Shown: positions 5,411 to 32,763, counted from the first letter of the stretch. The stretch is 64,000 bases of DNA from Octopus sinensis (GCF_006345805.1 NC_043000.1:118730001-118794000), one strand, 5' to 3'. A program made the numbers and translations. The notes: generated from the sequence alone by a model not told the origin.

Positions 5411-5442
5411 AATATATATTTATATACAGGCTGTATGATGCA

Positions 5443-6643: not shown

Positions 6644-6652
6644 TCTCCGTGT

Positions 6653-6695
<43 letters not shown>

Positions 6696-6955
6696 ATATA
6701 TATCCATGGCTATACACGCTGACGCGCGCGCACACACACGACAAAGCCTCTGTGAACTAAAAACTCTTGAACAAGTATTAACCAAAGTTAATTTCGGTTA
6801 GTAAAATATAAATCCTAATACCCACGTATCAGTGCAAGATCTGTAAATATAAGTCGACATGGCGAAGTTCGTCGCACAGTTTTATTTACTTTTTTTCCCC
6901 CATTTTCCAAGTGTTTTAGAAAATTATAACCGTCACAGCCCTTGTCGTTAAGTTA

Positions 6956-8159
6956 CAGGTGTAATAAATCACCTGTTGATGGATATTTTTAATAACGAAT
7001 TGTCGATAATAAATAACGAATTATTTGATAGTCTATTGTCTTACCTGTATCATTATAAATATAATCGCCATTTCTTGTGTTACGATTTTAATTACAGGTG
7101 AAATAAAACAATTCATAAACACGCATTTAATCTAATGTCGCTATAATACATAACTAAAGTGGATCAATGCGTGGTGGCAATATTTTATAAGTTACAAAAG
7201 GAAAATATATTTAAAAATATCAAATTAACAAACGAACTTATTTAAAATCTATTAATCTTGAGAAAGTTCTTTGCTTTACTATCGGAAAATAACTCAATGA
7301 CCGTTGTTTATAACTAAACTAATTTCAAAGTTTCATATATCGCCATATTTTGGTGATGATTAATTAAAGGTGTAAACAGGTAACTAACGTGACACCAATT
7401 CCTAGGAAATTTACTAACTTGATGGTTAGTTAATTATACTTTACGATTTCCTTTTTATATCTATATAGAAAAGAATATCACATGAAAACGAAATTTTGAA
7501 ACAGTGCAACATAGAATAAAACGTTCGACACAACTAGACCATAATATCTTTGTCGACCTAATTTTCGTTAATACGTGAGCAACTGCAGAAAGAATTTAAG
7601 AAGAGAGGAAGAAAAAAAAGTTATGGACTTACGAGGTGACAGCCACTCCCAGATGGGTCTATATTCGTAGGAGAAAATATACCAGCAACCTTTGTAGCGT
7701 TTACCTTGGTAGTCTTGATAAAATGTATAATCATTGAAACAAGTTTCCCAAAGGCCGAGTTTCACGAATTTATTGTTGGCCTGTTCGAAAGATTCCAGCC
7801 AGTTTGGACTGGAGAAAGCTATAACCATTAAAAAAAAGGCTAAACCGGTCATGGAAAAGCCATATATAAACATTCGAGAACTCGACATGTTCAAACAATA
7901 TCGAAGGTCTCTCTTATCGACAGGTAAATGTTCCTACGTTGATCTATACTACATATATTTAATATATCTGAGGTGAAAATTAACCTCAAGTTATTGTCGA
8001 TATAATATAATTGCTTTGATGGCCGCCTTATATACGATTGGCTGCTTGCTCTGACGAGACACAGGAAACTGACAACGATCAGGCAGTCAGGCTGGCTACC
8101 TACCTACATTTGAAGTCACTATATTGTTTAGGCTTGTTATCTACAGGTAAGGACAGGTG
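6956..8159. promoter_or_regulatory. Cluster of eight CAGGTR/YACCTG E-box-like sites around exon A, with a CCAAT box near 8037
   Basis: Sites at 6956, 6970, 7042, 7095, 7377, 7921, 8144 and 8154. Fewer than one is expected by base composition (rough estimate). Confidence 0.5.
7633..7888 (-). CDS. Claudin/PMP22-EMP superfamily first coding exon A (TM1 + extracellular loop 1)
   Basis: ATG at 7888. MSSSRMFIYGFSMTGLAFFLMVIAFSSPNW...KLGLWETC-17aa-CWYIFSYEYRPIWEWLSP. The exon is 256 nt and ends C|GTAAGT (phase 1). It carries the W-GLW-C-C claudin signature. Confidence 0.88.
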
Positions 8160-9026
8160 AGTAACTAAATCAGCCAAGTAGTTCAACAAGTGACAGCAGT
8201 AAATTTATAGCAGTTGGCCACATATCACCCGGGAAACTTGCAGAAGAATAGGAAAATCTAAATAGATATACATACCAGTATTATTCAGGAAATATACATA
8301 TAAAATAATATTAGGATATGTGTTCTAGAATAGCAAAGCAGTTTATTTAAAATACAAATCGTCGTAGCAGCAGACTAAACAATGAAAAGGTAAAGGTTTC
8401 TTTTAAGTTAGATAGACATATACAAAAAGACTTAATGGTCGTTAAGGGGGTATTTAATAAAAGGGAAAAGGGTCTAAATGTTGAAACGAAATTGTAAGTA
8501 TACAACACTAAATATATAGGTTGGTCATAGCTGGAAAGACGGAATTTTAAAGTTTACTATTAAACTTTTAAAAAATAGCAAATATGACGTTTTATTTTCT
8601 TTTTCCACAATTCAAATGGTGGGATTGAGAGCAAGCCAAGCCAGTTTCAATTCCAAGTCAGAGGACATTATCAACTTCCGTTCTGTAGCTTATGCTTAAG
8701 CTCGCTGTTAGCGTGCTAAAGAAGAGCAGTGGAGATGTTGGGGAGGATAACTATAGTAGCAAATTTGGAACTTGCCATTCTAAGTTCAATTCCAAACACA
8801 GCTTAACCTTCTTCCCACTGTTGATGTCACTCTAATATCTAAAGCCAGCCTTAATCATACAGACCTATAATCAAATGAATATCAGCCATCATTATCCAGT
8901 CTTTTTGGGTTGTTTTTGTTTTTTTTATTCAGACCTAGTGAATCTAGGATTACATTATTCAGTCTTTCTTTAAAAATAGGATACGATTGCTGGGAGAGAG
9001 ATGACTTCGATAATATATTTCTATAC

Positions 9027-9425
9027 AGGTGCAGGAGTTGCTGTGTGGTAAGTACCTTGCTTATGAACCACATGGTTCTGGGTTCAGTCGCACTGCATGG
9101 CAGCACCTTGGGCAAGTGTCTTCTACTATAGCCTCGGGCCGAGCAAAGCCTTGTGAGTGGTTTTGGTAGATGGAAACTGAAAGAAGCCTGTTTATATATA
9201 TATATATATATAGGTATGTATGTGTATCTGTTTGTCCCCCCAACATCGCTTGACAACCGATGCTGGTGTGTTTACGCCCCCCGTAACTTAGCTGTTCGGC
9301 AAAAGAGACTGATAGAATAAGTACTAGGCTTCCAAAGAATAAGTCCTGGGGTCAATTAGCTCGACTAAAGGCAGTGCTCCAGCATGGCCACAGTCAAATG
9401 ACTGAGGCAAGTAAAAGTGTAAAGA
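9027..9425 (+). mobile_element. tRNA-derived SINE family A (GGAGTGGCTGTGTGGTAAG head, internal TA/TG tract)
   Basis: Head...CCTTGGGCAAGTGTCTTCTACTATAGCC...GACTGAAACAAGTAAAAG. About 20 full or partial copies, e.g. 9715-10088(-), 15940-16290(-), 19518-19850(+), 21795-22197(-), 23868-24245(+), 30352-30740(+), 46665-46890(-), 61247-61690(+), 62668-62965(+). Confidence 0.85.
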
Positions 9426-11099
9426 GTGGCCGACTGGCCAGGTTGCCAGCTTGCCTGATGGCAAATGGACCCTTCGCCATTAGAACCCATATATGGGGGC
9501 TCGTGTTAGCATGTAAGGGGCCCATCTTCTCAAGTTTGAGAATTTTTTATTCACTCCTGGAAAAATGCATTATTTCAGCCTGACTGTGTTTGTAGACAGC
9601 TGAAAAGAATACTTCTAACACAAAAAAAAAAAGATAGCATTGTAGTTGTGAATGGGCCCCCTTAGTCTCCTGGCAATCTGTATTTTTAGACCCTGTCCAC
9701 CACTGCTTCTATACTCTTTTTACTTTTTTTACTCTTTTACTTGTTTCAGTCATTTGACTGTGGCCATGCTGGAACACTGCCTTTAGTTGAGCAAATCTAC
9801 CCCAGAACTTATTCTTTGTAAGCCTAGTACTTATTCTATCTGTCTCTTTCGCCGAACTGCTAGGTTACGGTGATATAAACACACCAGTATTGGTTGTCAA
9901 GCGATGTTAGGGGGACAGACACAGACACACATACATATATACGACGGGCTTCTTACAGTTTCCATCTATCAAATTCACTCAAGGCTTTGGTCGGCCTGAG
10001 GCTATAGTAGACTGAATCAGTGGGACTGAATCCGGAACCATGTGGTTGGTAAGCAAGCTACTTGCCACACAGCCACTCCTGCACCTATGATATACTTATG
10101 TGTAAAAACATATTCAATTGACCATACACCTATTTTTAAAATTAGTATTGTACCTAATCAAATTAAATTAAAATTGTGGATAAGGTGGCAAGCTAGTAGA
10201 ATCATTTGCACACAGGGCTAATGTTTAGCAGCACTTTGTCTGTCTTTGCATTCTAAGTTCAAATTCCACCAAAGTCGACTTTGCCTTTTGTTCTTTCAGG
10301 GTTGATTAAAAAAAGTACCAGTTGTACACTGGGGCCGAAGTAATTGGCTTCACCCTCTCTAAAAAATGAATTGCTGGCCTTGTGCCAAAATTTGAAACCA
10401 ATAAATTAGAACTGGATATAGCTAGTTAGTAGTGCACTACACCACCACCACTACTACTACTACTACTATTACATGTTGTTTGAAGAGGAGTTGCCAGTGA
10501 TATACATTATGTGGTGCCACATAAAAAAGTACTCAATATACACGGTAAAGCTGTGGGCATTAGGAGGGACATCCAGCCTAAAAAGCCATGTCACTACCAG
10601 ATATCTTGAATGTTTTAAGCACAGTTAGTTGTAAGCATTTTGGTTATGTGTCTTTAAGGATATCTTCCTCTCTCTCTCTCTCTCACTAGTTTTAAAGACC
10701 TTGTAAAGGATCTTGGACATTATTGTTTCTCCTAAAAGATCAAAAGAAAAAAAGTAAATAGGAAAGAGATAGTGCCTATGACTCTTTACAAGGCCTCTGG
10801 GATTGAAAGGAGGAATGTCAGAAATGTATCCTCAAAGCAGAGAACTGGTCTGGTGTTACACTGGGCAACTGATTAAATCTACCCCCCCCCCAATGATGGG
10901 GATGGCCAGCATGAGCTGTTACATTCCAGATCAAGCTAGTTCTGGTCAGATCAGTCAAGTAGCTTCATCCACAGCAGATGTCATCACTGCTACAGATCAA
11001 AAGCAGGACTTGCAGCCCATATGTGTACCTGCCAGGGATGATTTCTGAACAAGAACTGTCAACTTTTCTACCAATGCATGGGCAGCCTAAGAAGAAAGG

Positions 11100-11535
11100 C
11101 AGATCAGGTACCAGCGCTCTATAAACATTCATTATTTCTTTAATGCCTACAAGGGGCTAAACATAGAGGGGACAAACAAGGACAGACAAATGGATTAAGT
11201 CAATTACATCGACCCCAGGTACTTAATTTGTCGACCCTGAAAGGATGAAAGGCAAAGTCGACCTCGGTGGAATTTGAACTCAGAACGTAATGGCAGACGA
11301 AATACCTATTTCTTTATTACCCACAAAGGGCTAAACATAGAGTGGGCAAACAAGGACAGACATAGGTATTAAGTCGATTACATCAAACCCAGTGCATAAC
11401 TGGTACCTAATTTATCAATTCCAAAAGGATGAAAGGCAAAGTCGACCTCAGCGGAATTTGAACTCAGAACGTAATGGCAGACGAAATACCGCCAAGCATT
11501 TTGCCTGGCGTGTTAACGTTTCTGCCAGCTCACCA
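11100..11535 (-). mobile_element. tRNA-derived SINE family B, dimeric copy
   Basis: Head GAGCTGGCAGAAACGTTAACACGCC...GTTCTGAGTTCAAATTCCGC with the body unit repeated twice. Other copies at 25075-25230, 28098-28278, 36925-37440, 38450-38970, 51217-51780, 62050-62440 and 62965-63190. Confidence 0.8.
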
Positions 11536-11984
11536 CTGTAAACATTCCTTTCAACATCTTCATCCTTTGCTCTATAAACATTCCTTTCAACATCTTTTCT
11601 CTGCCACTGAAAATGTTTTTATGAACTCAAATGCTTGACAGACATTACAAGTACACCTCATCATCATTTAATGCCCAGTTTTCAAGCTTGCATGGGTCAG
11701 ACAAAATTTGTTGAGGCAGATTTTCTAGTCAGGTCAACTTCCTTTATCAAATTATTTTGTTATTGCTACTTTGGTGAATTTCTTTGCAATGATGGTCTTT
11801 GTATAACTTAGACTGCTGAAAACACATATCAGTCTTCTGAATTCCTCAAACAGAATGGCTTGGAAGCGGCCCTGTTGTCTTCCATCCAGTTTTCCTGGCC
11901 ATAAAATTACAGCTGTATATGATAAATGAATACTCTCAATGCCTCTCACATCTCCCCTGATTTGTTAATTGGTCATTTATCATA

Positions 11985-12430
11985 TAATCATCATCATCAT
12001 CATCATCGTTTAACGTCCGCTTTCCATGCTAGCATGGGTTGGACGGTTCAACTGGGGTCTGGTGAGCCCGAAGCTGCACCAGGCCAGTCAGATCTGGCAG
12101 TGTTTCTACAGCTGGATGCCCTTCCTAACGCCAACCACTCCGAGAGTGTAGTGGGTGATTTTATGTGCCACCGACACGGGTGCCAGACGAGGCTGGCAGA
12201 TGGCCACGCTCGGATGGTGTTTTTTATGTGCCACTGACACAGGTGCCAGACGAGGCTGGCAGACGGCCACGCTCGGATGGTGTTTTTTATGTGCCACCGA
12301 CACAGGTGCCAGACGAGGCTGGCAGACGGCCACGATCGGATGGTGTTTGTTACGTGCCCAGTCGATGCGGTACTGGCTACGGCCACGTTCGGATGGTTTT
12401 CTTATGTGCCACCGGCACTGGTACTACAAA
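11985..12430 (-). mobile_element. SINE family D copy with about 4 internal 59-bp tandem units
   Basis: The unit TTTTTATGTGCCACCGACACAGGTGCCAGACGAGGCTGGCAGACGGCCACGCTCGGATGGTG repeats over about 12158-12420. (CAT)n lies at the tail end. Confidence 0.8.
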
Positions 12431-12464
12431 GATACAAATTCCATTGATGTTCATCTATTTTGAT

Positions 12465-12857
12465 TTGGTTTGATTTGATTTGATTTTCACTTGCCTCAAC
12501 AGGTCTTCACAAGTGTCACAAGAAGGAAGGTATGCACAGGTGGACTGACTTCGTCCCAGGTAGGGGCCACGGGTTATGGCTTCACTAGTCTTGCTGGGTC
12601 TTCTCACGCACAGCATACTTCCATAGGTCTCGGTCTCTAGTCATTTCCATGGTGAGACCTAACGTTCGAAGGTCGTGCTTCACCACCTCATCCCAGGTTT
12701 TCCTGGATCTACCTCTTCCACGGGTTCCCTCAACTGCTAGGGATTGGCACTTTCTCACACACCTATCTTCATCCATTCTCGCCACATGACCATACCAGCG
12801 CAATCGTCTCTCTTGCACACCACAACTGATGCTTCTTAGGTACAGCATTTCTCTCAA
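12465..12857 (-). mobile_element. 3' fragment of an RTE-clade LINE
   Basis: ERRLRWYGHVARMDEDRCVRKCQSLAVEGTRGRGRSRKTWDEVVKHDL, the typical RTE C-terminal motif, followed by a (TCAAA)n tail. Confidence 0.8.
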
Positions 12858-13399
12858 GGTACTAATAGATTAAATAAATGATTACAAAAGAAAAATATTT
12901 CACTTATGTGTCCAAGTATAACTGAAAATTAAATTAAATATTCCATTATGATTTTGCTGTGTCTTAAGAGGGTCATTAAATCAAAATAAACACACACACA
13001 CCTGTTCTATTTCTTTACTTTCATCTGTCAACTATGTAACGAGTTAACTGATTGTTTGATTAATTATTTATTCAGTCAATTAATAAGCTAGTTTGTCAAA
13101 GTACTTTCATCACCATTTACAATCTCATCAATGACTCACCCTCTGTACTTCAGGTGTGTCACAACTCATTATAACAGAATCTGTTTCAATACAGGTGTTC
13201 CCATCAAGAATCTTGCAAACCAAATACAAACACAAAATATTCCATTATCATTGTAGTTCAACCCTTCAGCATTCAGATTACTCTGTCAAACATACTGCTT
13301 GTTTATTCTCATTCTTTGGAATCAATTATACATTATCTCATAAGCTTCAAGATCTTGATAATGTGATTGTCTCTCTTTATAGTGATAGTGTAGGGAAGG

Positions 13400-14200
13400 T
13401 GTGAGAAGCTAGATATGGTCAGTTTGGACACAAAACCGGTAGAATATTTGGGCCAGATATAGCTGGTTTAAATGCTAAGTCCACAAAAAATTTATTAAAT
13501 GAGGTAACTTCTCCAGAAAATCATTTAAATATACAAGTTTAACTTAATTTTTACAACACACAAAAATGGCCTTCTCTGAACTCCTTGGTTATTTTCAGCA
13601 GTGTATTATAAAATCATTTAAGAACCTATCTGATGAAATACACTATCTTTTCTCTTTGTTTTCATTTATTAATATTACCTTAGATATTTGGCCTAGCTTC
13701 TCAGCTACTTGGTTCAAAAGTTTCTGGGGTGCCGGTGTTTCTCCTTTCTCTACCTACTGTCTTTGGTGCTTCACATTTTTATAGAGAACCCATTTCTCAT
13801 CACCAGTCACTATTTAGTCCAGAAAGGGTTTATTCGTGAGATGTGACAGCAAAGTAGAGCACATATTCACTCTTTGCATGTGATTAGACTCGGGAAGTTT
13901 GTGAGGAATCTGACTTTTTCAATAACCAAATCCAAGCTTCTCTGTTAGTTCCTCAACAGTTACGATGGGATTTTGCTCCACCAGAGTTTGCAGGACATCC
14001 TTGTCGAGCTTACAGATCTTCTAGGCTTCTAGTTTCTGGAACCACCGTTGACATTGGCTGATGCTTATTGTCCAATCACCATATACTGCATTAATATTCC
14101 TCACGCTGTCACTGCATTGTTGCCTTTATTGAACTCGTGAAGCAAAATATGCCGAATATGCTCCTTTGTCACTTCCATTATAGCTCTGAAAAAATAACTC
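13400..14200 (-). mobile_element. Degenerate Mos1-type mariner transposase relic
   Basis: Minus strand starts MEVTKEHIRHILLHEFNKGNNA and continues through frameshifted HTH and catalytic fragments (VTGDEKWVLY-like). Confidence 0.75.
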
Positions 14201-14728
14201 TTAAAATCAAACTGCATTCTTCAAAACTTGCACTAAGAATAAGTACTAAGTAAAATTACTACCTGCTCTTATTGCAAGTTGACTTTTATTTCACGCAATT
14301 GACAAAACCACAATATTTATGAGATGACCCAATAGAATGTAATTTATGGGAGATTTGATTATTATTTGTAGCTTGTTAAGTAAGTTCACACAAGCTCCTT
14401 TGTTTACTCATCTTAACAGCCATATGTTTGGAATGTCACACTAGCCCTGTCCATTTGACAAGCTACCTGTATATAACCATAGTTTTTAGTTCAGAAAAGT
14501 TGGCTAGAGTTATTCAACAATAATCTGATTTAGAAAATAAATGTGAAAATTATTTTCATAGAAAAAGGCAAAGGAGTGGCTGTGTGGTAAGTAGCTTGCT
14601 TGCGAACCACATGGTTTCAGGTTCAGTCCCACACCATGGCACCTTGAGCAAGTGTCTATTACTATAGCTTTGGGCTGACCAAAGCCTTGTGAGTGGATTT
14701 GGTAAAGGGAAACTGAAAGAAGACCATC

Positions 14729-14760
<32 letters not shown>

Positions 14761-15375
14761 GTTTAAATATTTGTTGTGCAAGATTTTTTATGTGAAGTCG
14801 TGTGTTGAAACAGATATTGTTATATTTCATTAGACAAATTACAGAAGCTACACACATAATAGAAAATAAACCTAGCCTGAATAGAAAACTAGAATGGAGC
14901 ACTAACACACACCACAACATATGACGATAGAGGATCCTGAAAACATAATAAATACACAGATAAATAAATAAACTAATAGAAATAAATAACTATATATATA
15001 TATATATTTTTCGATTCAATTTATTCTTATTATTACTAGTATTGTTGTTATACATACATACATACATACATACATACATACATACAAGCATATGTAATGA
15101 TAATAATGGGTGGATGTAAACACATGAACAAAATAAGAATAAACAAAAACAACAAAAACAAAATACAAATTACATGAACATATAAAATTACAAATTACAT
15201 GAACATATATAAACAGAAGATACAAATATTACAGGCATCCCCCACAAACACACACTAAATAAACATAAACGCACATAGAGATATAAGCATGTACAAATGA
15301 AGACATACAATAGAAATACAAAATGGCTGACGGTTAGTAAGGAGAGTCAGATATAAGGAAGAAGAAAACAAAGGA

Positions 15376-15415
15376 CCACTGATGTGGTCACAGGAGTGTG
15401 ACGAAAGAACTCTGG
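15376..15415 (+). ncRNA. Degenerate hammerhead motif in a Penelope-derived repeat
   Basis: cca-CTGATGT-g-GTCACA(ggag)TGTGAC-GAAAGAACTC-tgg. Same family as 56617-56656, but with A9 and stem III mutated. Confidence 0.5.
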
Positions 15416-15529
15416 CCGAAATAAGATTAAGATTAATGTAAAAAATAAATAACACTGAAGCAAAGTAACACCAAATATATAGTGTTTTTATTGGCTAAAC
15501 TGGCAAAATGATCATTCCGAAATATAACA

Positions 15530-15588
<59 letters not shown>

Positions 15589-16131
15589 ATATGTTGTGTG
15601 TCTGTGTTTGTCCCCCAACATCACTTGACCAAAGCCTTGTGAGTGGATTTGGAAGACGGAAACTGAAAGAAGCCTGTCATATATATGTATATATATGTGT
15701 GTGTTTGTGTTTGTCTCCGCCCCCCCACCACCACCACCACCACCAACATCGCTTGAACACTGATGCTGGTGTGCAAAAGAGACCGATAGAATAAGTACTA
15801 GGTTTACAAAGAATAAGTCCTGGGGTTGATTTGCTTGACTAAAAGCAGTGCTCCAGCACAGCCACAGTCAAATGACTGAAACAAGTAAAAGAGTAAAACA
15901 GAGTAAAGAGAGAATTTGAACTAAAAACAATCTGATGATTACTCTTTTACTTGTTTCAGTCATTTGACTGCAGCCATGCTGGAGCACCACCTTTAGTCAA
16001 GCAAATTGACCCCAGGACTTATTGTTTCTAAGACTAGTGCTTATTCTATTGGTCTCTTTGGCCGAACCGCTAAGTTATGGGGACTTAAACACAACATCGG
16101 TTGTCAAGCGATGTTGGGGGAGGGGGGACAA

Positions 16132-16162
<31 letters not shown>

Positions 16163-16535
16163 CATATGTACAATAGGCTTCATTCAGTTTCTGTCTACCA
16201 AATCCACTCACAAGGCTTTGGTCGGCCCGAGGCTATAGTAGAAGACACTTGCCCAAGGTGCTTACCACACAGCCACTCCTGCACTTATTAGTAGAATTTA
16301 CTTTTTTTATTCTTTTATTTGTTTCAGTCACGTGACTGCAGCCATGCTGGAGCACTACCTTTAGTCAAACAAATCGACCCCAGGACTTATTCTTTGTAAG
16401 CCTAGTACTTATTCTAACAATCTCTTTTGCCGAACTGTTAAGTTATGGGGATGTAAACACACTAACATCAATTATCAAGCAATGATGAGGGGACAAACAC
16501 AGACACCCTAACATATACACACACACACATATATA

Positions 16536-22189: not shown

Positions 22190-23800
22190 ACACCTATCAG
22201 AACATTTTAGCACACATTGCATACATAGATTCTTTTTTTTTTTACAGACTCCATACATTTCTGTGGTTCTGTTTCAGCATTTTGTTTTCACACACATACA
22301 TTTGACTTTAGTTCCAGAGGTAGAACTTTCTTCAAAAGGGTATTTGATAGTACATGAACAACCGCAAGGTGAATCACCACAAATTTCTTTTGCAACATTT
22401 TGAATATCTTCCCATCGACTAATGACTGAATTGCGCAGCTGTTTTAAGAGCAATATCCAAAATATTATAAAAAACATGCATTAGCCATTGTCTACTGCTT
22501 GCTTTGACTGAATAAAGTTTTGCGATTTGGTCAATCACATCATCTACGCCTACCTTATTCTTGTTATAAAAAAAAGTATGGTGTCAGGCATTTTTTCGAG
22601 GTTATTTTCAGAAGAATCTTCTACATGTTGATGCAAGGTACTCCAAACAACAACATACTTTGATTTTTAACACTGGTATGATATAAGTGAGACAGTGGGC
22701 TTTTCTGTGGATTTCAAAACCAGTTTCATGCACTGGTTCCACCTGTTCTACTGCTTCTGGCAATTCCCTTCTGTTGTCATGAACTGCTCTGGCCAAACTG
22801 CAGTTTTGTTTTGTGAGCTATGCAATTACTGAATATCTAAAACATTGTCACATGTATTTATAAACAAAAGCAGGTGCAAGTTTTCAAAAGTTGCCAATGC
22901 ATCCATTAATTGACGCACGTGATCCATATAGGAAGTGGTTTATTTTTTTTTTTTACAGTTGGTGCAAGCAACCTATAATTTATAGTGTCTAAAGATATCA
23001 TAAAACTATGAAAATTCAAGCACTATGATGTCAAAATCTACAATAGTTTTGGAACTGTGCGCAATTAAGATTTCAAAATTCATCAAATGACTCACTCGGT
23101 CCTTCTTGTGTTAATGAATTGATATATATGACAGACTTCTTTCAGTTTCCGTCTACCAAATCCACTCACAAGTCTTTGGTCAGCCGAAGGCTATAGCAAA
23201 AGACACTTGCCCAAAGTGCCAAGCAGTGGGACTGAACCTGGAACCACGTTATTGGGAAGCAAGCTTCTTACCACACAGCCATGCCTAAATCTCTCTTTAT
23301 ACAATTTGCCAGCTCAATCCATCACTAGTGTCTTCAAATTCTACAGTTTTTCTGTTTTGTTTTATTTAAAGAAAAGTATTATGATTCCAATTTACTGGCT
23401 GCAGTGAAGCATTATCAGTTTTGTAGAGAAAACAGCCAGCAAACTCTTCACAAAACCATCTCAATGCTGGCACCAGCAACCCTATGACAGGCTCTAACAA
23501 TTGTATGCCATGAGGAAGAAGAAAAGTCTTACATCAGAATATGTTACCAGAAATGGAATGGTTACTGATTGTTACAGAATAAATAAACTGGGATCCTGTA
23601 ACTCTTTTGAATATTTCATGTCTCCCTAAGAGCTCTGCCCAAGATTTTAGACCTCATCTTCTTACCATCATGCGATATATTCCACTATTGGTATCACCTG
23701 CCAGATTGCACAACAAGCTGGAATTACATTAGTCAAGGTTCAATTATCTAAAACATATCAGACTATTCTCAATTGCATTGAACAAAAATGCCTTTGAAAT
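22190..23800 (-). mobile_element. Degenerate piggyBac (PGBD-like) transposase relic, split by a SINE at 23128-23285
   Basis: Minus-strand fragments: TCDN..., VHDNRRELP, KYVVVWSTLH, MPDTIL-FYNKNKVG-VDQIAKLYSVKA, FYNILDIAL, and a Cys-rich tail (KCMCVKTKC...GVCKKK...MCAK). Confidence 0.75.
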
Positions 23801-25405
23801 TGGTTGCTAAATCCTCATTCATCAACACACTACAACCACTACCAGTGTAATACTCCAGCGTGTAGACACAGGAGCGGCTGTGTGGTAAAGTAGCTTGCTT
23901 CCCAAACACATGGTACTGGGTTCAGTCCCACTGTGTGGCACCTTGGGCAAGTATCTTCTACTGTAGCCTCGGACCGACCAAAGCCTTGTGAGTGGATTTG
24001 GTAGACGGAAACGGAAACTGTATATGTATATATATATATATATATATATAGGTATGTGTGTTTGTGTGTCTGTGTTTGTCACCCCAACATCGTTTGAAAA
24101 CCGATGCTGGTGTGTTTACATCTCCGTAACTTAGCAGTTCAGCAAAAGAGATCGATAGAATAAGTACTAGGCTTACAAAGAATATGTCCTAAAGGCGGTG
24201 CTCCAGCATGACTGCAGTCAAATGACTGAAACAAGTAAAAGAGTAAATACATACTCCCTCTGTGTCTTCTTTCAAATTTACCTGCTTCTCCTACAAAGTA
24301 TTTCATCCAAACTCTTACCTAGTACCATCTTAAGATACAGGCACACAGGGCAATTGCTAAGGGTTTCACAGACCTAGGGACACAATTCTGATCTATGTAT
24401 GCTGTAACTTAGTGTCAATCAATAACTACTATAGGTCAAGGTACCAGCAACTCGGGCAGTCGCCCAGGGTATCATGTGTTTTTTAGTCTACATTTTCTAT
24501 TTTGCTCCTTGTGAAAGTTTTTAAAAACTATACTTGTAAGGGTGCCGAAGTTCAACTAATCTAGCGCCAGCAACCCTAAGGCAGGCCCTAACAATAGGAC
24601 CCAGTGCATTGATTTGCCTGGGGATCTCACAGGCCTAGGAATCTGATTCTGGTCTATGTATGTTGTAGATTGCTGTCAATAAATAAATACTACATGGCCC
24701 AATGCATTAAATTTGACCAGAGGCACTGCTAAGACATCCCTAGAATGATTGCTCGCTAGAATTCTCTCTGCGTGTATGATTTGTCTGTAGACATCAACAG
24801 GTAGAAATTCAAGTTGAACATCAACTTGGAAGGACCTGCAATGGATATGGATACACTCCCATCCTTTGGAGGCTAATTTAAAACGAAGACAAAATTGGTT
24901 TGGTTTCTGGTTTCTTAATGAAAGTGAAAAGATTATTAAAAAGTGAGTTTCGAAATAAAAGACATCGAAGTTTGTTCTAATTGAATCAAATACATACTTT
25001 TGTTGACCACAAACAGATATCATGCCAGTAACAGTTAGAATAATGTGAATGGGTCAACGATATTTAAGATCGATTTCAAATTCCGCCGAGGTCGACTTTG
25101 CCTTTCATCATTTCGAGGTCGATAAATTAAGTACCAGTTACGCACTGAGCTCGATCTAATCGACTTAATCCCTTTGTCTGTCCTTGTTTGTCCTCTCTGT
25201 GTTTAGCCCCTTGTAGGTAGTAAAGAAATAGGTATTTAAGATCGATGTCAACATAACACGAATTAACAGATTGTAAGCTTGGGAAGATGTCATGCGATAA
25301 ACCGAACATCCCACGATAATGAAAGTTCAAAGCTTGTTTACGTAAGGGAGATAATGATTTCATACCAAAAAATGTCCAGTAAATAATTGCTTATAAAGTA
25401 CTTAC

Positions 25406-25676
25406 ATGGCAATATAATATCCCGGAGAGCTCTTACTTCGTCTGAAAATACCCAGTAACATCCTTTGTAGCTTTGGCCACTCATAGAGTCCGGTCTTTTA
25501 TAACCATCATAACATACTTCCCATAAACCTGCACTAATGAAATTTGGATCACCACCTTCATGTCGATCGATCCAGTGTGAACTAGAAAAACAAATCAGTT
25601 TGAACAGTCCTGCTAGAAAGGTCCCAGTAAGACCTGCGATGAAGAAGATCTTCGGGAAATTCCGCTCAGTGGGCAT
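25406..25676 (-). CDS. Claudin/PMP22-EMP superfamily first coding exon B (TM1 + ECL1)
   Basis: ATG at 25676. MPTERNFPKIFFIAGLTGTFLAGLFKLICFSSSHW...SAGLWEVC-17aa-CYWVFSDEVRALRDIILP. The coding part is 271 nt and ends T|GTAAGT (phase 1). An upstream acceptor TTTATTTATTTATCACAG at 25733-25750 implies a 5'UTR intron. Confidence 0.88.
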
Positions 25677-25862
25677 GGCAGTTCCAGTGTGGACGATAAG
25701 CGGAAGTTGATGTTAGACCTTATCCCCCGAAGCTGTGATAAATAAATAAAAATTGTGATGTGGGAACAGATGGAAAATTATTTCTGTGAATAAACAGCGC
25801 CTTTTTTTTTTTTTTCTTTTCAATATAACTCCCCCCTCGGCTTTTTTGTTACGAAGTGGTCG

Positions 25863-25935
25863 CTTACCACCTTTAGACTGTTCTACTTATTTTTTAATGT
25901 GGTTATCTACCTGCATTACCTGCGTGACGTCACCT
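25863..25935 (-). promoter_or_regulatory. Putative promoter and non-coding first exon for exon B
   Basis: Candidate donor GTAAGC at 25867, paired TACCTG at 25908 and 25917, and a palindromic GTGACGTCAC (CRE) at about 25924-25933. Confidence 0.45.
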
Positions 25936-28900
25936 AGGTGTGCCAGTCATTGATTGTTAGTGACTACTGCTACGTTTAGTACGATTGAAGTGCAGTGACA
26001 GCTTTTTCTTAATATATTTTTAACTGATCAATTGTGTATGTATGCGCGCGGTCAATAAAATCGTTTGGGAAAAGTTCAACTGATAATAGTAAAGCAACAC
26101 AAAAGGTTTTTAGGTTAGCAGCAGAAATTAAGGGGGAAAAAATCAACAAAAAATTGATTTTATTAAAGATGCCAGATACTAATCATAGTTTTTTTACGAA
26201 TTGTGGATTCTCTTAGAAAATATATTATCATCACCACTTTCTATACAGATTATCCCGTGGGTGGCATAATGTGTTAGATTGTAATGGTGGGACGAAAAGA
26301 AATTGTCTCTCTGAAGAGAATAAACTAAATAAAATATAAATAGACAGGAATTGAAACTTATATAAGTTAGCACTAGCGAGCTATCATATCTTTTAAACTC
26401 ATAAAGATGGCCAAAAAGAAAATACCACAAGCAATTTTTTGCCGTTAGACCTAAATGATTCTAGTGAAAGCTGTTGATGGCTAGCTGTTCAAAGTATTAA
26501 TTTTAACATAGTCCATTTGCTGTATAACATCAAGCAAACTTTTAGAAAACCTACGACTTCAAATGAAAAGAGTATGATAGCATTTAATTTGATAGGATTC
26601 AAATAATAACAACGTACTGGACAAGCAAATCTTTTCAGATTAAAGAATGTTGAGGATTATTAGGTTATTTTTATCCATTAATCTATAATTCTGAAGCCAG
26701 AAACTGCTACACAAATAATGGGTTTATAAACAGACGGTTGTGTGTGTGAACTGGTCGTGTGGATAAAATATTGAATAGTTCAAAAATTTTGGCTTCAGGA
26801 TCATAGCAAGAGTTTCGTTGTATTTCTGGGTTATTGAAAATTGGTTCTATATTTTCTGGGGAAAATTAGTAAAACCGTCATCATTAATGTAAAATATTAT
26901 TATATAACAGTTTATTTTCGAATAATGTTACAACCTACAAGGACCCACAGATAGATTTGAACCCGTGAAAATATCTGACTTAATTTTCATTAACCAATTT
27001 AAATTTTCGCTCCAAGAATTGTCACCAGTATTGTTAATAAAGAAATCATTATTTTAAATATCCCATACATTTGTGAAATAATAAATACTTGATATTTTGT
27101 GATGAAATCAATGAACAGTTAGTTCTACCGATTTCTCCATGGAAATATATCTATTTTCAACAACCCAGAAATAGAACGAAACCCTTGTATGATCATGAAA
27201 TCAGAATTTCCAAAGTCAGGCAAGATTTCATCTGCTCAGTTATGTACAACTGTCTCTTCTTAAACTCATTATTTTGAGTAGGATTTCCCGGGTTTTGTGA
27301 TTTTTAAATAACGCATAATCTGACAGCGAAAATCAAGACGTATACCGTAAATTATATAATTAATCTGCCAGTGAATTGCTTCGATTCTTATCTGTTTATT
27401 TTCATTTACGTGGAAAATGCTTTTAGGTAGGGAATCCCGATTTAATAAATACTGCTCAAAATGAAAAGAAATCGATTCTGACTAATCTGATATTTATTTG
27501 ACAATCAAAATAAATTTAGGGATGAGGATTCTTTTCTTTTACAAAACCGTTTGTTTAGGTTTTACAGTCTTTTCGTTGATTTTCTTTCTTTAATAATTGA
27601 AAATAGTTAATTGCATCGACTTCCATGGTTTATTGAATTTTATTTGATTCCCAGAGATAACAAATCTGTCTCTTCAAAGTATTTGAACCCCTGTAAACCG
27701 AAACGTTAAAATGTGGCGATCTTTGGACTTTAAGACAGAGAAATAAACTGCACCAGTTGAAAATGAAGGAAAAACACTGATTGCTATAGTCTGTGCATAT
27801 GTACCTATCTATAGGCATTAGCTACAGCCGTGTGTAATTTGGCCATTTCCACCTTTAGTAGATTAGAAATAACTTTCCCCTGGATAAGGCGCTAGACGAT
27901 CGCATATAGTTTTCCCGGAGAAGCTATTTACATATTGTATTTTAAATATGCCCATTGGAGCTGTGTAAAATTAAATGAATTAGAGACAGAAAAATCGAGT
28001 ATCATATTTGAACTCGTGATATATGAAGTAGCTATTCGGTATCTTATAATTTTGCTTCGACATCATCACGATCAACAGAAGAATGATATTAGATGATTTT
28101 TCGTCTGCCGTTACGTTCTGAGTTCAAATTCCGCCGAGGTCGACTTTGCCTTTCATCCTTTCGGGGTCGATAAATTAAGTACCAGTTACGCACTGGGGTC
28201 GATGTAATCGACTTAATCCGTTTCTCTGTCCTTGTTTGTCCCCTCTGTGTTAGCCCCTTGTGGGTAGTAAAGAAATAGATATTGGATGATTTTCAGGTCT
28301 TTTCACAAAAGCAGATGGCTTGAATTATCTTCAGCAAGAAGGTTTAATACAAATTCAGACCACCAGAAGTTTACTTATGTAGGTGCTACACACAATATAA
28401 GATCAACCGAAATCTAATAATCTTGCCATGGGCATTTAATGCAGAACAACTGGGATTTTAGTTAAGTGTTCTCCGGGTGTTTTACGGTTTATCTCACTTC
28501 ACTTAATGGTGGTTTCAAATTTTGGTACAAATTTTAGGTGATGGATTTTAGTCAATATCCTCAACCACAGTATATGACTGGTACTTTAATCACTTTCGTT
28601 ACCAACCCGGCCGAAACCGGCTCTGGCTCTGTAATACAAATGTCTTGTTTTCGTAAGTTCTGAATTAAAATCTTCCACCAAACCTTAATCACAATTTATG
28701 TTCTTAACACTAGCTGAATGATAACTAAGTTATTTTACTAAATTCTTTGTTGTATTTAAAATTAATGGAAAGAAACACAGAGCATCTCAACAGAAATATT
28801 GTAACAAAAGGGTTATTCTATTGAGCCTGGAAAGATGAAAGGTAAAGTAGATCTCTGCGGGGATTGAATTCGGAACGTAAAGAATCAGAAGAAACAACGT

Positions 28901-29789
28901 TAAGCATTTGGTTCGACATGCTAGCTATTTCAAATTTTGGCACAATACCAAAATTGGTAGTGTGTTAGTCGATATCATCGATCCCAGTACTTAATTGGTA
29001 TTTTCTTTTATGAAAATGAAAATTTTCAGAGAATGAAAGGTGAAGTTGACCACGGCGAGATTTGAACTTAAAACGTAAAAAAAAAAAAAACGGAAGAAAT
29101 GTCGCTTAACATTTTATCCCACGCCCAAACGAATTTGCCGGCTCGCTGCCATCAGTTGTTAATAGTAAAAAATAAAAGATGATATCGACAGGATTTGAAC
29201 TCTAAAACGAAAAGATCACAATGTAATTTTTACGACACTAACGACTCTGCCAGCTCACTGCACCTTTCCAACTGATGGATAAGCCATATCCAATGGGAAA
29301 ATTATTTCTAAACTGCTGAAGGAGGAAATGGCCAAGTTACACACGACAGTAGGTCATGCATATAGACAGGTACATATACACAGGCTATAACAATCAGTGT
29401 TTTTCTTTCACTTTCAACCAGTGCAGTTTATTTCTCTGTCTTAAAAGTCCAAAGATCGCAACATCTTAACGTTTCGGTTTCCAGCTAATGTATATGAAAC
29501 AGTAAGATACAGTATTATACGCATTGAGGTTTACTCTACATGCATAATCACAACATACAAAAGCATAAAATAAAATATAAAATTATATTTACATATATAT
29601 ATATGTATTTAGTTGAATAAGGTACTTAAAATTGAGGTACCTAGTTAGGTCAGAATAAAATGCACATCCAGCAATTTTTACATGAATGCCAACCTTGGTA
29701 CAAAAGTACTGGCAGAATGATATTCGGGTAATATAATGTATGCAGTTAATTTAAACTAACTGAGTATGGATTGACACCTGTCCTTCAAT

Positions 29790-29792
29790 TGT

Positions 29793-29854
<62 letters not shown>

Positions 29855-29866
29855 CATACACACATA

Positions 29867-29931
<65 letters not shown>

Positions 29932-30281
29932 TTAATCCAAACGGGAAAACAAAAAAACAACAACAATGGAACAATTACAGTATTATTATTAATAGGCGCT
30001 CAGGAAATGGAAGCAGGAGGGTATGACGTTTCGAGCGGAGCTCTTCGTCGGAAACATAAAGAAGGAAGAGAGAGGAAAGAAAGATCCCAAAGCGGGCAAC
30101 AGGGATAGAGAAAAAAAAAAAAAAACGACTGGTGTTTACGAGTTACATATATATATACATACATATATATATATTTATATATACACATATACATATATAT
30201 ATATACACATATACATATATATACATACATATATATATTTATATATACACATATACTATATATATATATACACACATATAC

Positions 30282-30314
<33 letters not shown>

Positions 30315-30736
30315 CACATATACTTATATATATACATATATATATATATATAGGCGCAGGAGTGGCTGTGTGGTAAGTAGCTTGCTAACCAACCACATGG
30401 TTCCGGGTTCAGTCCCACTGCGTGGCATCTTGGGCAAGTGTCTTCTGCTATAGCCCCGGGCCGACCAATGCCTTGTGAGTGGATTTGGTAGACGGAACCT
30501 GAAAGAAACCTGTCGTATATATATATATATGTGCGCGTGTGTTTGTGTGTCTGTGTTTGTCCCCCTAGCATTGCTTGACAACCGATGCTGGTGTGTTTAC
30601 GTCCCCGTTACTTAGCGGTTCGGCAAAAGAGACCGATAGAATGAGTACTGGGCTTACAAAGAATAAGTCCCGGGGTCGATTTGCTCGACTAAAGGCGGTG
30701 CTCCAGCATGGCCGCAGTCAAATGACTGAAACAAGT

Positions 30737-30767
<31 letters not shown>

Positions 30768-30862
30768 ATAATAATAATATTAGGGAGTATATCCAAACTT
30801 ACAGGGGAAAATTAGATTTAGGATAAAATCAAATTTCACAGTATAAATATATCCTTCAATTG

Positions 30863-30915
<53 letters not shown>

Positions 30916-31115
30916 TAATTTTAATAATTTAAATTTTATATTTTATATATATATTATATATTATATTAATTATATTTATTATTCGTTTTTTTATGTTTTG
31001 GTTTATGTCTATCACTGTTTGAGTTGCCTAATAGTGATTTTATCTCTAATTTAATTTATATATATATATATACACACACATATACATATATATACACATA
31101 TACATATATATACAC

Positions 31116-31156
<41 letters not shown>

Positions 31157-31575
31157 TATTTATATATATATACATATACATATATATATACATATATAAT
31201 ATATATATATACATATACACATATATATATATACACATATACATATATATATATATACATATATTATATATACATACACATATACATATATATATATACA
31301 CATACATATATATATACATATATATATACACACACACACATATATATATACATATATATATATACACATATACATATATACACATATACATATATATACA
31401 CACAAATATATATACATGTACATATATATATTTATATATATATACACACATATATACATATATATATATATAGAGAGAGAGAGATAGTTAGATAGATAGA
31501 TAGATATGCATACATATATTTATACATATATATATACACATATATATATGCACATATATATGCACATATATATAC

Positions 31576-31654
<79 letters not shown>

Positions 31655-31690
31655 CATACATACATACATACATACATACATACATACATA
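29790..31690. repeat. Large (TA)n/(TACA)n/(CA)n microsatellite complex with an embedded SINE and a Penelope-derived fragment
   Basis: Seen directly in the sequence. It explains the YI/YT-rich pseudo-ORFs in the ORF track. Confidence 0.95.
30021..30055 (-). ncRNA. Minimal type I hammerhead motif (CCGACGA core variant)
   Basis: gttt-CCGACGA-a-GAGC(tcc)GCTC-GAA-ACGT-C-atac. Stem I has one mismatch. Confidence 0.6.
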
Positions 31691-32507
31691 CCCTGTTGTT
31701 GATGTTGAAATTCTAATGAAGGGGTATTGGATCTAGGTTAGAAACCGACTCTTTCTCTATTGGCAGAAAATCTTGAAATAAACTGAATAATTACATACAT
31801 ACATGTGCATGTACACATTATATACAATATTAAAATTTTAAAACGCACTTGTAAATAAAGACTCCAATTTGAGGGAATGACCACTCAGGTGAGATCGCGG
31901 TACCCAAAACATCGACTGCCTTCGGATCCAGACATATGCTCTTTCTCAACTCCTACCACCCGATAGAGTTGCAGGATCGACTCTTATCCATTCTTAATGT
32001 ACAATTCCCATACACACCTTCATAACGTTTTCTGAAGAACACAACGTCCCTCTACAGCCTGGTGGAAAAGAAAATCTTTCTCTTCGAATGTTGACTTTAT
32101 TTTCTGATGTGGTACGGAAGGTTTTAATTTTGTTTATTTTGAAATCTCTTTAACAGACGCATAGTTGTGAAAGTTTGGAATAAATCTGTACAACGAATTG
32201 GTTCAGGAAGGTGGCCGTGCACCGGAAAGAAATAGTTGATGTTTGTTTTCGTTAAATGATTGATAAGACTGCATCATTATCTGTCATTTATACCAGTTTC
32301 ATTACGAGCTAATTAGCTACAACCAATCATATTAATAATTTCTAATTATTAATATTGCTCATAAAATAAATACACGTATATAAAATGTAATGGTGAAGTG
32401 GAAATGTTCAAAACATGAAACAAACAAATAAAAAGCATTCTAAATCTATGATTGTTATCAACAGTGAAGTTATCAAAACGGAATTTAATACATTAAAGTT
32501 TACTTAC

Positions 32508-32763
32508 AAGGTAAAACATATTCCTTCACGGATGAGAGACTGTCAGAATACAACCACCAGCATCCAGTGAATATCTTTTTAGCTCCTAATGGGGTGTATT
32601 CTCGATAACAAACTTCCCAAAGTCCAATACGGCTCGGTTTCTCACCACTTTGGTTAACCCAATACGAAGTTGAAAATCCAATTATCTTAAAAAGTAATGC
32701 CAAAAGCGTAAAGGCAATGCCAGAGAAATAAAATCTTCGCTTGGAGTCTTTAATAATAACCAT
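32508..32763 (-). CDS. Claudin/PMP22-EMP superfamily first coding exon C (TM1 + ECL1)
   Basis: ATG at 32763. MVIIKDSKRRFYFSGIAFTLLALLFKIIGFSTSYW...RIGLWEVC-15aa-CWWLYSDSLSSVKEYVLP. The exon is 256 nt and ends T|GTAAGT (phase 1). Confidence 0.88.

What the first reader, a model, noticed from the sequence alone, without database searches (positions are those of the whole stretch)
7633..32763. Candidate variable-first-exon claudin locus: three interchangeable TM1+ECL1 cassettes with no constant exons between them
Seen in the sequence: three same-strand exons, each with its own ATG, TM1 and W-GLWE-x-C...C loop. All end at the identical position (17 codons after Cys2, at Pro) in the identical phase (phase 1, GTAAGT). 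A manual scan of the non-repeat parts of the 6.7-kb (C-B) and 17.5-kb (B-A) gaps, and of the 7.6 kb downstream of A, found no TM2-TM4 exons. Established: vertebrate CLDN10a/b and CLDN18.1/18.2 swap TM1+ECL1 through alternative first exons, ECL1 sets paracellular selectivity, and clustered protocadherins use variable exons spliced to constant exons. Inference: this is one gene with at least 3 promoter-chosen ECL1 cassettes spliced to shared exons left of position 1. That would give a cephalopod septate-junction or cell-recognition protein a protocadherin-like diversification scheme. I do not know of a description of this in molluscs.
Basis: partly seen in the sequence, partly recalled or inferred. 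Interest (0 to 1): 0.88.

Follow-up and report, generated by a model that had tools for sequence, protein, structure and literature searches.

The report
Octopus claudin-like gene, three first exons

Summary
Three paralogous minus-strand exons lie at A 7633-7888, B 25406-25676 and C 32508-32763. Each has an ATG, TM1 and a W...GLWE.C...C loop, and each ends Pro + 1 nt | GT(A/G)AGT.

tblastn and a profile HMM over the window plus 200 kb to its left find exactly one TM2 exon (1.8 kb left of position 1) and one TM3-TM4 exon (21.3 kb left). Nothing lies in the gaps. The three conceptual splices are letter-for-letter RefSeq Octopus sinensis LOC115211099 isoforms X2, X1 and X3; O. bimaculoides has the same three.

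Sepia esculenta RNA contigs carry A-type and B-type first exons on a 682/682-nt identical constant part, with unrelated 5' leaders. Argonauta hians keeps C-B-A-E2-E3 in the same order, with conserved donors and pN of 0.06-0.18 against saturated pS.

The protein is a Claudin_2 (PF13903) tetraspan. Its fold is equally close to claudins and TARPs, so its function is open.

This is a CLDN10/CLDN18-type alternative-first-exon gene conserved across coleoid cephalopods, not a protocadherin-scale system. It is already annotated; I found no paper describing it. Interest is modest.

Side find: the annelid Owenia has three first, one middle and three last exons.

The parts
32508..32763 (-). Variable first exon C (coding part), used in isoform X3. 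ATG is at 32763-32761. It encodes an N-terminal stub, TM1 and ECL1 (W..GLWEVC..C), ending Pro + T. The donor GT is at 32507-32506.
   Evidence: The exact spliced product is XP_029635854.1. The Argonauta ortholog is 68% identical, with pN 0.18 against pS 0.65 and a conserved donor T|GTGAGT.
25406..25676 (-). Variable first exon B (coding part), used in isoform X1. ATG is at 25676-25674. It ends Pro + T, and the donor GT is at 25405-25404.
   Evidence: The exact spliced product is XP_029635852.1. A B-type transcript in Sepia esculenta is spliced to the same constant exons as the A-type transcript. The Argonauta ortholog is 73% identical, dN/dS about 0.10.
7633..7888 (-). Variable first exon A (coding part), used in isoform X2. 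This is the ancestral, constant-exon-proximal cassette. ATG is at 7888-7886. It ends Pro + C, and the donor GT is at 7632-7631.
   Evidence: The exact spliced product is XP_029635853.1. In the tree it falls inside a mollusc-wide orthogroup (support 97/98). It is 91% identical in Argonauta. The A-type transcript was found in 23 Sepia RNA contigs.
7889..7935 (-). About 47 nt directly upstream of exon A's ATG that still align with Argonauta. Probably 5' UTR or core promoter.
   Evidence: In blastn of O. sinensis against Argonauta, the syntenic block 7935-7627 extends past the ATG. All other non-exonic matches are multi-copy repeats.
1..7632 (-). The in-window part of the intron between exon A and constant exon 2. 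Exon 2 (TM2, 153 nt, acceptor ctacag|CA TGG TTC) lies outside the window at coordinates -1811..-1963 (C4:118728037-118728189). Exon 3 (TM3, ECL2, TM4, tail and stop) lies at -21276..-21496 (C4:118708504-118708724).
   Evidence: HMM E-values are 1.8e-12 for exon 2 and 1.4e-33 for exon 3, and the next best hit is E=0.78. Genome-wide there are five E1-type exons but only three E3-type exons.
7936..25405 (-). Intron sequence for isoforms X1 and X3. It is repeat-filled (SINE copies, microsatellites, Tc1/mariner remnants) and holds no TM2-TM4 exon.
25677..32507 (-). Intron sequence for isoform X3, which also holds the upstream region of exon B. No TM2-TM4 exon is present.

Best explanation
The window is Octopus sinensis chromosome contig C4:118730001-118794000. 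It holds the 5' part of one three-coding-exon claudin-superfamily gene, LOC115211099, which has three alternative first exons.

Each first exon carries its own start codon. Each encodes the cytosolic N-stub, TM1 and nearly all of the first extracellular loop, 56-61 aa including the W-GLW-C-C signature. All three end in phase 1 with a consensus donor.

All three join the single acceptor of exon 2 (TM2), which joins exon 3 (TM3, ECL2, TM4 and tail). The split codon reads CCA (Pro) for A and TCA (Ser) for B and C.

Shown here:
- the exon anatomy;
- a single constant exon set;
- exact identity of the three splice products with RefSeq isoforms;
- use of A-type and B-type first exons on one constant body in cuttlefish RNA;
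- purifying selection on all three cassettes between Octopus and Argonauta.

Inferred:
- Each cassette is driven by its own promoter. The cuttlefish A and B transcripts share no 5' leader sequence, which supports this.
- A transcript starting at C or B skips the downstream cassettes because those are first exons with no in-frame acceptor.
- The isoforms keep the same TM2-TM4, ECL2 and cytoplasmic tail but present different TM1/ECL1 surfaces (about 35% pairwise identity; net loop charge -1, -3, +1). They would therefore differ in extracellular partner or pore-lining properties, probably by tissue.

Exon A is the ancestral cassette. B predates the octopus-cuttlefish split. C has been found only in octopods so far.
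For: - Anatomy and phase.
- Constant exons: tblastn finds one exon 2 and one exon 3 left of the window, with splice sites read. An HMM scan of 264 kb gives only those two hits.
- Method control: the same HMM scan recovers E1-E2-E3 for every ordinary tandem paralog in Lineus, Patella and Liolophura.
- Genome-wide count: five E1-type exons against three E3-type exons. The two chromosome-3 paralogs each have their own E3 10-14 kb downstream.
- Database match: exact look-up gives A+E2+E3 = XP_029635853.1 (X2), B = XP_029635852.1 (X1) and C = XP_029635854.1 (X3). O. bimaculoides has X1-X3 and O. vulgaris has X1 and X2.
- Transcripts: Logan RNA contigs L027 (B-type) and L028-L033 (A-type) are 682/682 nt identical from the predicted junction through the 3' UTR, and unrelated upstream of it. 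One of these runs is Sepia esculenta larval RNA-seq.
- Argonauta hians locus L034 has C-B-A-E2-E3 in the same order within 13 kb. All cassettes are open and the donors are conserved. pN is 0.06/0.14/0.18 against pS of 0.65-0.79. Only the five exons are syntenically conserved.
- Family: PF13903 at 66-77 bits against a cutoff of 29.1. There are four hydrophobic segments. The AF2 model has pLDDT 79, with four helices and an ECL1 beta-sheet. Foldseek hits TARPs, claudin-15/3/4 and GSG1L.
Against: - I saw no octopus RNA directly. For cassette C the only evidence of splicing is the automated RefSeq model in two species, plus conservation of the ORF and donor.
- Separate promoters are inferred, not shown.
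- A strong acceptor-like site (tttatttatttatcacag|) sits 56 nt upstream of exon B's ATG. B's leader may therefore be spliced to a further upstream non-coding exon, which could in principle be shared.
- Function is unknown. There is no PDB sequence homolog, and the fold does not discriminate claudin from TARP.
Confidence: 0.9

Rival explanations
1. Ordinary tandem paralogs: B and C are first exons of separate genes whose own TM2-TM4 exons sit in the gaps or elsewhere nearby.
For: This family usually expands by whole-gene tandem duplication. Lineus has three, Patella two and Liolophura at least three adjacent E1-E2-E3 genes.
Against: No TM2-TM4 signal appears in the gaps or in 200 kb of flank apart from one E2 and one E3. 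The same scan does detect E2 and E3 of real tandem paralogs. Genome-wide there are five E1 exons against three E3 exons. In compact Argonauta, C, B and A are 4 kb and 3 kb apart with nothing between them. RefSeq and Sepia transcripts join them to the shared exons.
Confidence: 0.02
2. Cassette C (and possibly B in octopus) is an orphan or rarely used exon, and RefSeq isoform X3 is a computational chaining not backed by abundant transcripts.
For: I found no transcript-derived protein with a C-type exon. C is the most diverged cassette. The B-type transcript was seen in 1 Sepia contig, against 23 for A-type.
Against: The ORF, ATG, W-GLW-C-C motif, exact length to the donor and the T|GTRAGT donor are all kept between Octopus and Argonauta. 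pN is 0.18 against pS 0.65, while the flanking intron is unalignable. A dead exon would not show this. The same isoform is annotated in two species.
Confidence: 0.06
3. The three cassettes are mutually exclusive internal exons behind one shared promoter and non-coding leader exon, chosen by splicing rather than by promoter.
For: An acceptor-like polypyrimidine-AG lies 56 nt upstream of B's ATG, and a weaker one lies upstream of C's. I could not map transcription starts.
Against: The Sepia A-type and B-type transcripts have 746-nt and 289-nt leaders with no shared sequence. About 47 nt upstream of A's ATG is conserved in Argonauta without an acceptor.
Confidence: 0.07

Closest known systems
Vertebrate CLDN10 (a/b) and CLDN18 (18.1/18.2) alternative-first-exon isoforms (from established knowledge; reviews such as PMC9153115 and PMC12172364 surfaced but I did not read them)
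   Same: This is a claudin-superfamily tetraspan gene. Alternative first exons, each with its own ATG, swap the N-terminus, TM1 and first extracellular loop. TM2-TM4, ECL2 and the tail come from shared exons. The number of isoforms is small.
   Different: There are three cassettes rather than two. The protein is a Claudin_2 (PF13903) lophotrochozoan orthogroup, not a classical PF00822 claudin. It has no C-terminal -YV PDZ motif. The first-exon arrays presumably arose independently. Tissue specificity and any paracellular role are untested.
Clustered protocadherins and UGT1A (variable first exons spliced to constant exons; from established knowledge)
   Same: The gene logic is the same: tandem variable first exons, each presumably with its own promoter; the 5'-most transcribed donor is spliced to one constant acceptor; downstream cassettes are skipped because they lack acceptors.
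   Different: The scale differs: 3 against roughly 9-60 cassettes. The variable exon here encodes only TM1+ECL1 of a tetraspan, not a whole ectodomain. There is no evidence for stochastic or combinatorial single-cell choice or for a conserved promoter element.
TARP gamma subunits, GSG1L and classical claudins (solved structures)
   Same: The AF2 model of isoform X1 superposes on TARP gamma-2/3/8, claudin-15 (4p79, TMq 0.68), claudin-3/4 and GSG1L with Foldseek probability 1.0. It has a four-helix bundle and an ECL1 beta-sheet.
   Different: Identity is only 13-21%. phmmer finds no sequence-level hit in the PDB. The tail motifs of TARPs and claudins are absent. The fold cannot say whether this protein forms junctions or acts as a channel or receptor auxiliary subunit.
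Ordinary tandem paralogs of the same family in Lineus longissimus, Patella caerulea and Liolophura sinensis
   Same: The three-coding-exon plan is the same, with identical phase-1 boundaries after ..LxP and after TM2.
   Different: There every E1 has its own E2 and E3. In cephalopods three E1 share one E2-E3.

Membership tests
Claudin superfamily, Pfam Claudin_2 (PF13903: PMP-22/EMP/MP20/claudin) | Full-length match to the family HMM above the gathering score | tested here: met
   Isoforms X2, X1 and X3 score 76.6, 71.9 and 66.1 bits against a cutoff of 29.1, covering profile positions 1-192.
Claudin superfamily, Pfam Claudin_2 (PF13903) | Four transmembrane helices with a large ECL1 carrying W-(G/N)LW-C-C | tested here: met
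   Kyte-Doolittle finds four segments in each isoform. The AF2 model has helices 7-31, 91-118, 124-158 and 172-213, with strands in ECL1. W, GLWE, C and C are invariant in A, B and C.
Claudin superfamily, Pfam Claudin_2 (PF13903) | Claudin/TARP-type three-dimensional fold | tested here: met
   Foldseek against the PDB gives 117 hits at E<=1e-3. Every one of the 50 hits listed is a TARP, a claudin or GSG1L, with TMq 0.58-0.68. The model has mean pLDDT 79 and pTM 0.72.
Classical tight-junction claudins (PF00822) | Match to PF00822 above the gathering score | tested here: not met
   X2 scores 22.3 and X1 22.5 bits against a cutoff of 26.7. X3 is not listed.
Classical tight-junction claudins (PF00822) | C-terminal PDZ-binding -YV motif | tested here: not met
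   The shared tail ends ...KAHRMRRY. The motif definition is from memory.
Classical tight-junction claudins (PF00822) | Forms junctional strands or sets paracellular selectivity | not testable with these tools
   This needs expression and localisation or electrophysiology.
Alternative-first-exon gene of the CLDN10/CLDN18 type | Two or more first exons, each with its own ATG, ending at the same position and phase | tested here: met
   All three end Pro + 1 nt | GTAAGT, 17 residues after the second Cys.
Alternative-first-exon gene of the CLDN10/CLDN18 type | A single shared set of downstream exons | tested here: met
   with the method control.
Alternative-first-exon gene of the CLDN10/CLDN18 type | Transcripts that join each first exon to the same exon 2 | tested here: inconclusive
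   This is met for A-type and B-type in Sepia esculenta RNA contigs, with 682/682 nt identical after the junction. For octopus, and for cassette C, the only evidence is the exact match to RefSeq models X1-X3. I could not read any RNA directly.
Alternative-first-exon gene of the CLDN10/CLDN18 type | A separate promoter for each first exon | tested here: inconclusive
   The Sepia A and B leaders (746 and 289 nt) share no sequence. No transcription-start data were available for octopus.
Clustered-protocadherin-like diversity locus | A large array of variable exons (tens) | tested here: not met
   There are exactly three cassettes at this locus and five E1-type exons in the whole genome.
Clustered-protocadherin-like diversity locus | Stochastic, cell-by-cell promoter choice | not testable with these tools
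   This needs single-cell RNA data.

The most novel reading that the evidence does not exclude
This lophotrochozoan claudin-like family may repeatedly evolve exon-cassette arrays instead of whole-gene duplicates. Coleoid cephalopods have two or three TM1+ECL1 first exons. Independently, the annelid Owenia fusiformis has three first exons, one TM2 exon and three TM3-ECL2-TM4 last exons, allowing up to nine combinations. If the cassettes are used cell-type-specifically, for example in the nervous system, this would be a small combinatorial surface-diversity system built on a tetraspan. That would be a modest analogue of the protocadherin logic in animals that also expanded protocadherins.
Probability: 0.15. 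Interest if true: 0.6.

Novelty: new member of a known kind. Interest (0 to 1): 0.3.

Why it matters
The finding shows that swapping TM1+ECL1 through alternative first exons is not confined to vertebrate CLDN10 and CLDN18. The same trick evolved in an invertebrate claudin-superfamily gene. It has been kept at least since the common ancestor of octopus and cuttlefish for cassettes A and B, and across octopods for cassette C.

It gives a clean natural experiment on ECL1 function: one constant body carries three loops of about 35% identity and different net charge.

It also flags annotation errors in relatives. These include exon-only 'proteins' that read into the intron, the Owenia model that chains two first exons, and the fused Liolophura model.

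It does not open a new class of mechanism. The isoforms are already in RefSeq.

Tried and rejected
- Literature. A search for octopus, claudin and alternative first exon returned nothing relevant. A search for the LOC, XP and UniProt identifiers returned no paper. A search on claudin-like, mollusc and septate junction gave only general barrier reviews.
- PDB sequence search with isoform X2: no hit at E<=1. Family placement therefore rests on Pfam and fold.
- Cassette C outside octopods. A region-restricted search of 5.8 billion proteins found only the octopus isoform. Among the 174 proteins retrieved up to that point, the best non-octopod match to C is the Sepia B-type exon at 39%. No decapod or Nautilus genome was reachable, so absence is not shown.
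- Origin of B and C. The first-exon tree puts A in a mollusc-wide orthogroup (97/98). B and C sit on long branches, weakly grouped (79/87) with a chromosome-3 paralog. In-situ exon duplication and capture of first exons from decayed tandem paralogs cannot be told apart.
- Owenia isoforms. None of the nine predicted E1 x E3 combinations is in the protein collection, and no transcript-derived relative was found. Usage remains untested.
- dS between Octopus and Argonauta is saturated (pS 0.65-0.79; the Jukes-Cantor correction is undefined for A and E3). I therefore report pN and pS rather than a precise dN/dS.


Full report
**What is in the window**

A stop-to-stop ORF listing and tblastn of the three peptides against the window confirm three paralogous coding exons on the minus strand.
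- Exon A is at 7633-7888, B at 25406-25676 and C at 32508-32763.
- Pairwise identity is 31-37% (E 1e-10 to 1e-16). No fourth copy exists in the 64 kb; the next best hit has E=0.09.
- Reading the DNA shows each has an ATG, a hydrophobic TM1, W, GLWE-x-C and a second Cys, then 17 residues to a Pro.
- After the Pro comes one extra base and then GTAAGT: cct c|gtaagt in A, cca t|gtaagt in B, cct t|gtaagt in C.
- On their own the exon peptides hit Pfam Claudin_2 weakly.

**Where the window comes from**

The genome search places the window at G000:C4:118730001-118794000 in a 2.72-Gb genome. C4 is 164,836,235 bp long. That is the same length as the contig that encodes the Octopus sinensis RefSeq proteins found later. 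The window is therefore from O. sinensis.

**Finding the constant exons**

A profile of the three exons, searched against 1.84 billion representative proteins, gave 494 relatives. These include full-length proteins of 200-220 aa that continue ...LxP-PWFISVQ....

I fetched 200 kb to the left of the window and ran tblastn with 13 full-length homologs against flank plus window. Besides the three first exons it found exactly two further exons, both on the minus strand and both left of position 1.
- Exon 2 is at window -1811..-1963. Its acceptor is tttttttctacag|CA TGG TTC. It encodes TM2, is 153 nt long, and ends TGT G|gtaagt.
- Exon 3 is at window -21276..-21496. Its acceptor is ttttcaacag|GT CTA. 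It encodes TM3, ECL2, TM4 and the tail, and ends in TAA.
- Phase 1 is respected throughout. The split codon reads C+CA = Pro for A, matching the ..P-P-W-F.. of other species, and T+CA = Ser for B and C.

I then built a profile HMM of the TM2-TM4 part from 61 homologs. Run with all filters off on all 11,269 frames of at least 15 aa across the 264 kb, it gave E=1.4e-33 for exon 3 and 1.8e-12 for exon 2. Nothing else scored better than E=0.78.

The same scan serves as a control for sensitivity. It recovered E1, E2 and E3 of every ordinary tandem paralog in Lineus, Patella and Liolophura.

Genome-wide, O. sinensis has five E1-type exons: three here and two on contig C3. It has only three E3-type exons: one here, and one 10-14 kb downstream of each C3 first exon.

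**Are the splices real?**

I spliced A, B and C conceptually to exons 2 and 3 and looked the three proteins up by exact sequence. All three are in NCBI.
- The O. sinensis LOC115211099 isoforms are X2 (A, XP_029635853.1, 209 aa), X1 (B, XP_029635852.1, 214 aa) and X3 (C, XP_029635854.1, 209 aa).
- O. bimaculoides LOC106876987 has the corresponding X1-X3. O. vulgaris has X1 and X2.

A homology search with X1 also returned full-length proteins encoded on 1-2.4 kb contigs assembled from sequencing runs. Contigs that short encoding the full spliced protein must be spliced transcripts.
- P0161 carries a B-type first exon. P0164 carries an A-type first exon and occurs on 23 contigs.
- At the DNA level, the B-type contig L027 and the A-type contig L028 are 682/682 nt identical from the predicted junction through the 3' UTR.
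- Upstream of the junction they are only paralogous (50/90). Their 289-nt and 746-nt leaders share nothing.
- The split codon is again Ser for B-type and Pro for A-type.
- One of the runs holding the A-type transcript, SRR23936169, is Sepia esculenta larval RNA-seq.

Alternative use of A and B on one constant body is therefore shown by RNA in a cuttlefish. It predates the octopus-cuttlefish split.

**Conservation**

The Argonauta hians locus L034 is compact.
- It holds C (2635-2889), B (6933-7205), A (10001-10255), E2 (14475-14624) and E3 (15255-15473), all open and in the same order.
- The donors are C|GTAAGT, T|GTAAGT and T|GTGAGT.
- Against O. sinensis, amino-acid identity is 91% (A), 73% (B), 68% (C), 94% (E2) and 85% (E3).
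- pN is 0.06, 0.14, 0.18, 0.05 and 0.08 respectively. pS is saturated at 0.65-0.79.
- blastn of the whole gene region shows that only the five exons, plus about 47 nt upstream of A's ATG, are syntenically conserved. Every other match is a multi-copy repeat.

B and C are therefore maintained coding exons, not decaying relics.

In a first-exon tree, A falls in a mollusc-wide orthogroup with support 97/98. B from Octopus, Argonauta and Sepia forms a clade (91/83). C from Octopus and Argonauta forms another (99/99). Both B and C sit on long branches, so their origin is unresolved. I found no C-type exon outside octopods.

**What the protein is**

- All three isoforms match Pfam Claudin_2 end to end, at 66-77 bits against a cutoff of 29.1. 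They fall below the classical claudin PF00822 threshold.
- Each has four hydrophobic segments.
- ECL1 is 56-61 aa long, with net charge -1 (A), -3 (B) and +1 (C).
- An AlphaFold2 model of X1, built from a 16-sequence alignment, has pLDDT 79 and pTM 0.72. It shows four helices and a beta-sheet in ECL1.
- Foldseek against the PDB returns TARP gamma-2/3/8, claudin-15, claudin-3/4 and GSG1L at TM 0.58-0.68.
- phmmer against PDB sequences returns nothing.
- The tail ends -RRY, not -YV.

The protein is a claudin-superfamily tetraspan. Whether it is junctional, adhesive or an auxiliary subunit cannot be told from these data.

**Mechanism**

Shown: three first exons, one acceptor, compatible phases, annotated and (for A and B) transcribed isoforms, and selective constraint.

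Inferred:
- Each cassette has its own promoter.
- A transcript that starts at C or B carries the downstream cassettes as intronic sequence, because they lack a usable in-frame acceptor.
- The products differ only in the N-stub, TM1 and ECL1. They therefore differ in extracellular interaction or selectivity while sharing TM2-TM4, ECL2 and the cytoplasmic tail.

One caveat applies. A good acceptor-like site lies 56 nt upstream of B's ATG, so B's leader may include a further upstream non-coding exon.

**Comparison and novelty**

The design is that of vertebrate CLDN10a/b and CLDN18.1/18.2, and it shares its logic with clustered protocadherins and UGT1A (established knowledge). With three cassettes and no evidence of stochastic choice, it is not a protocadherin-scale diversity system.

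The isoforms are already in RefSeq. No paper in the searchable library cites the gene or the protein accessions. I rate it a new member of a known kind, of modest interest.

**Side observation**

The annelid Owenia fusiformis locus L035 has three first-exon cassettes, one TM2 exon and three TM3-TM4 last-exon cassettes. All have compatible phase-1 splice signals, and each last exon has its own stop. The public model chains two of the first exons together. I found no transcript evidence for any combination. Lineus, Patella and Liolophura instead have ordinary tandem genes.

Noticed in passing
L035 (Owenia fusiformis CAIIXF020000001.1:61232024-61268832), about 10001-31500 +: The homologous annelid locus has three TM1+ECL1 first exons, a single TM2 exon and three TM3-ECL2-TM4 last exons. 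All have phase-1-compatible splice signals, and each has its own ATG or stop. This suggests alternative 5' and 3' cassettes, up to 9 isoforms. The public protein CAH1776236.1 wrongly chains two first exons.
   Followed up: partly
window 25733-25750 (-): A polypyrimidine tract followed by AG (tttatttatttatcacag|) lies 56 nt upstream of exon B's ATG. B's 5' leader may be spliced to an upstream non-coding exon. The region is not conserved in Argonauta.
   Followed up: no
window 52967-56335 (+): A LINE copy sits in a GC-rich island (50-55% GC against 33-42% around it). An APE-type endonuclease (Exo_endo_phos_2) and a 755-aa RVT_1 ORF lie in one frame, interrupted by two in-frame stops.
   Followed up: partly
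window 41615-43958 (+): A Penelope-like retroelement: a reverse-transcriptase ORF followed by a GIY-YIG endonuclease ORF, spread over three consecutive frames. A long (TA/TAC)n microsatellite precedes it.
   Followed up: partly
window 16694-17591 (-) and 19024-19362 (+): Tc1/mariner-like transposase remnants (DDE_3 plus an HTH domain) lie inside the B-A intron. A second, inverted HTH fragment lies about 1.5 kb away.
   Followed up: partly
proteins P0003, P0006, P0154, P0158 (other cephalopod assemblies): Several public 'proteins' of 90-190 aa are just an A-type or B-type first exon read through the donor into the intron (ending ...LSPRK.. or ...LPCE/CKY). The constant exons were missed in those assemblies.
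   Followed up: partly
L038 (Liolophura sinensis CM072722.1:12168857-12201059): The 431-aa RefSeq model XP_064596691.1 is two adjacent complete paralogs (E1-E2-E3-E1-E2-E3) fused into one protein. Further paralogs flank it.
   Followed up: partly
window about 9100-9190, 14640-14730, 15630-15680, 19580-19680, 22040-22128, 23130-23220, 30400-30520 and others: A short interspersed repeat family occurs many times in the introns. It is also present in multiple copies around the Argonauta gene at 75-96% identity, so it appears to be shared across octopods.
   Followed up: no
G000:C3:100523747-100537622 (+) and G000:C3:5165816-5176186 (-): These are the only other members of this subfamily in the O. 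sinensis genome. Each has one E1-type and one E3-type exon 10-14 kb apart, i.e. the ordinary single-first-exon layout.
   Followed up: partly
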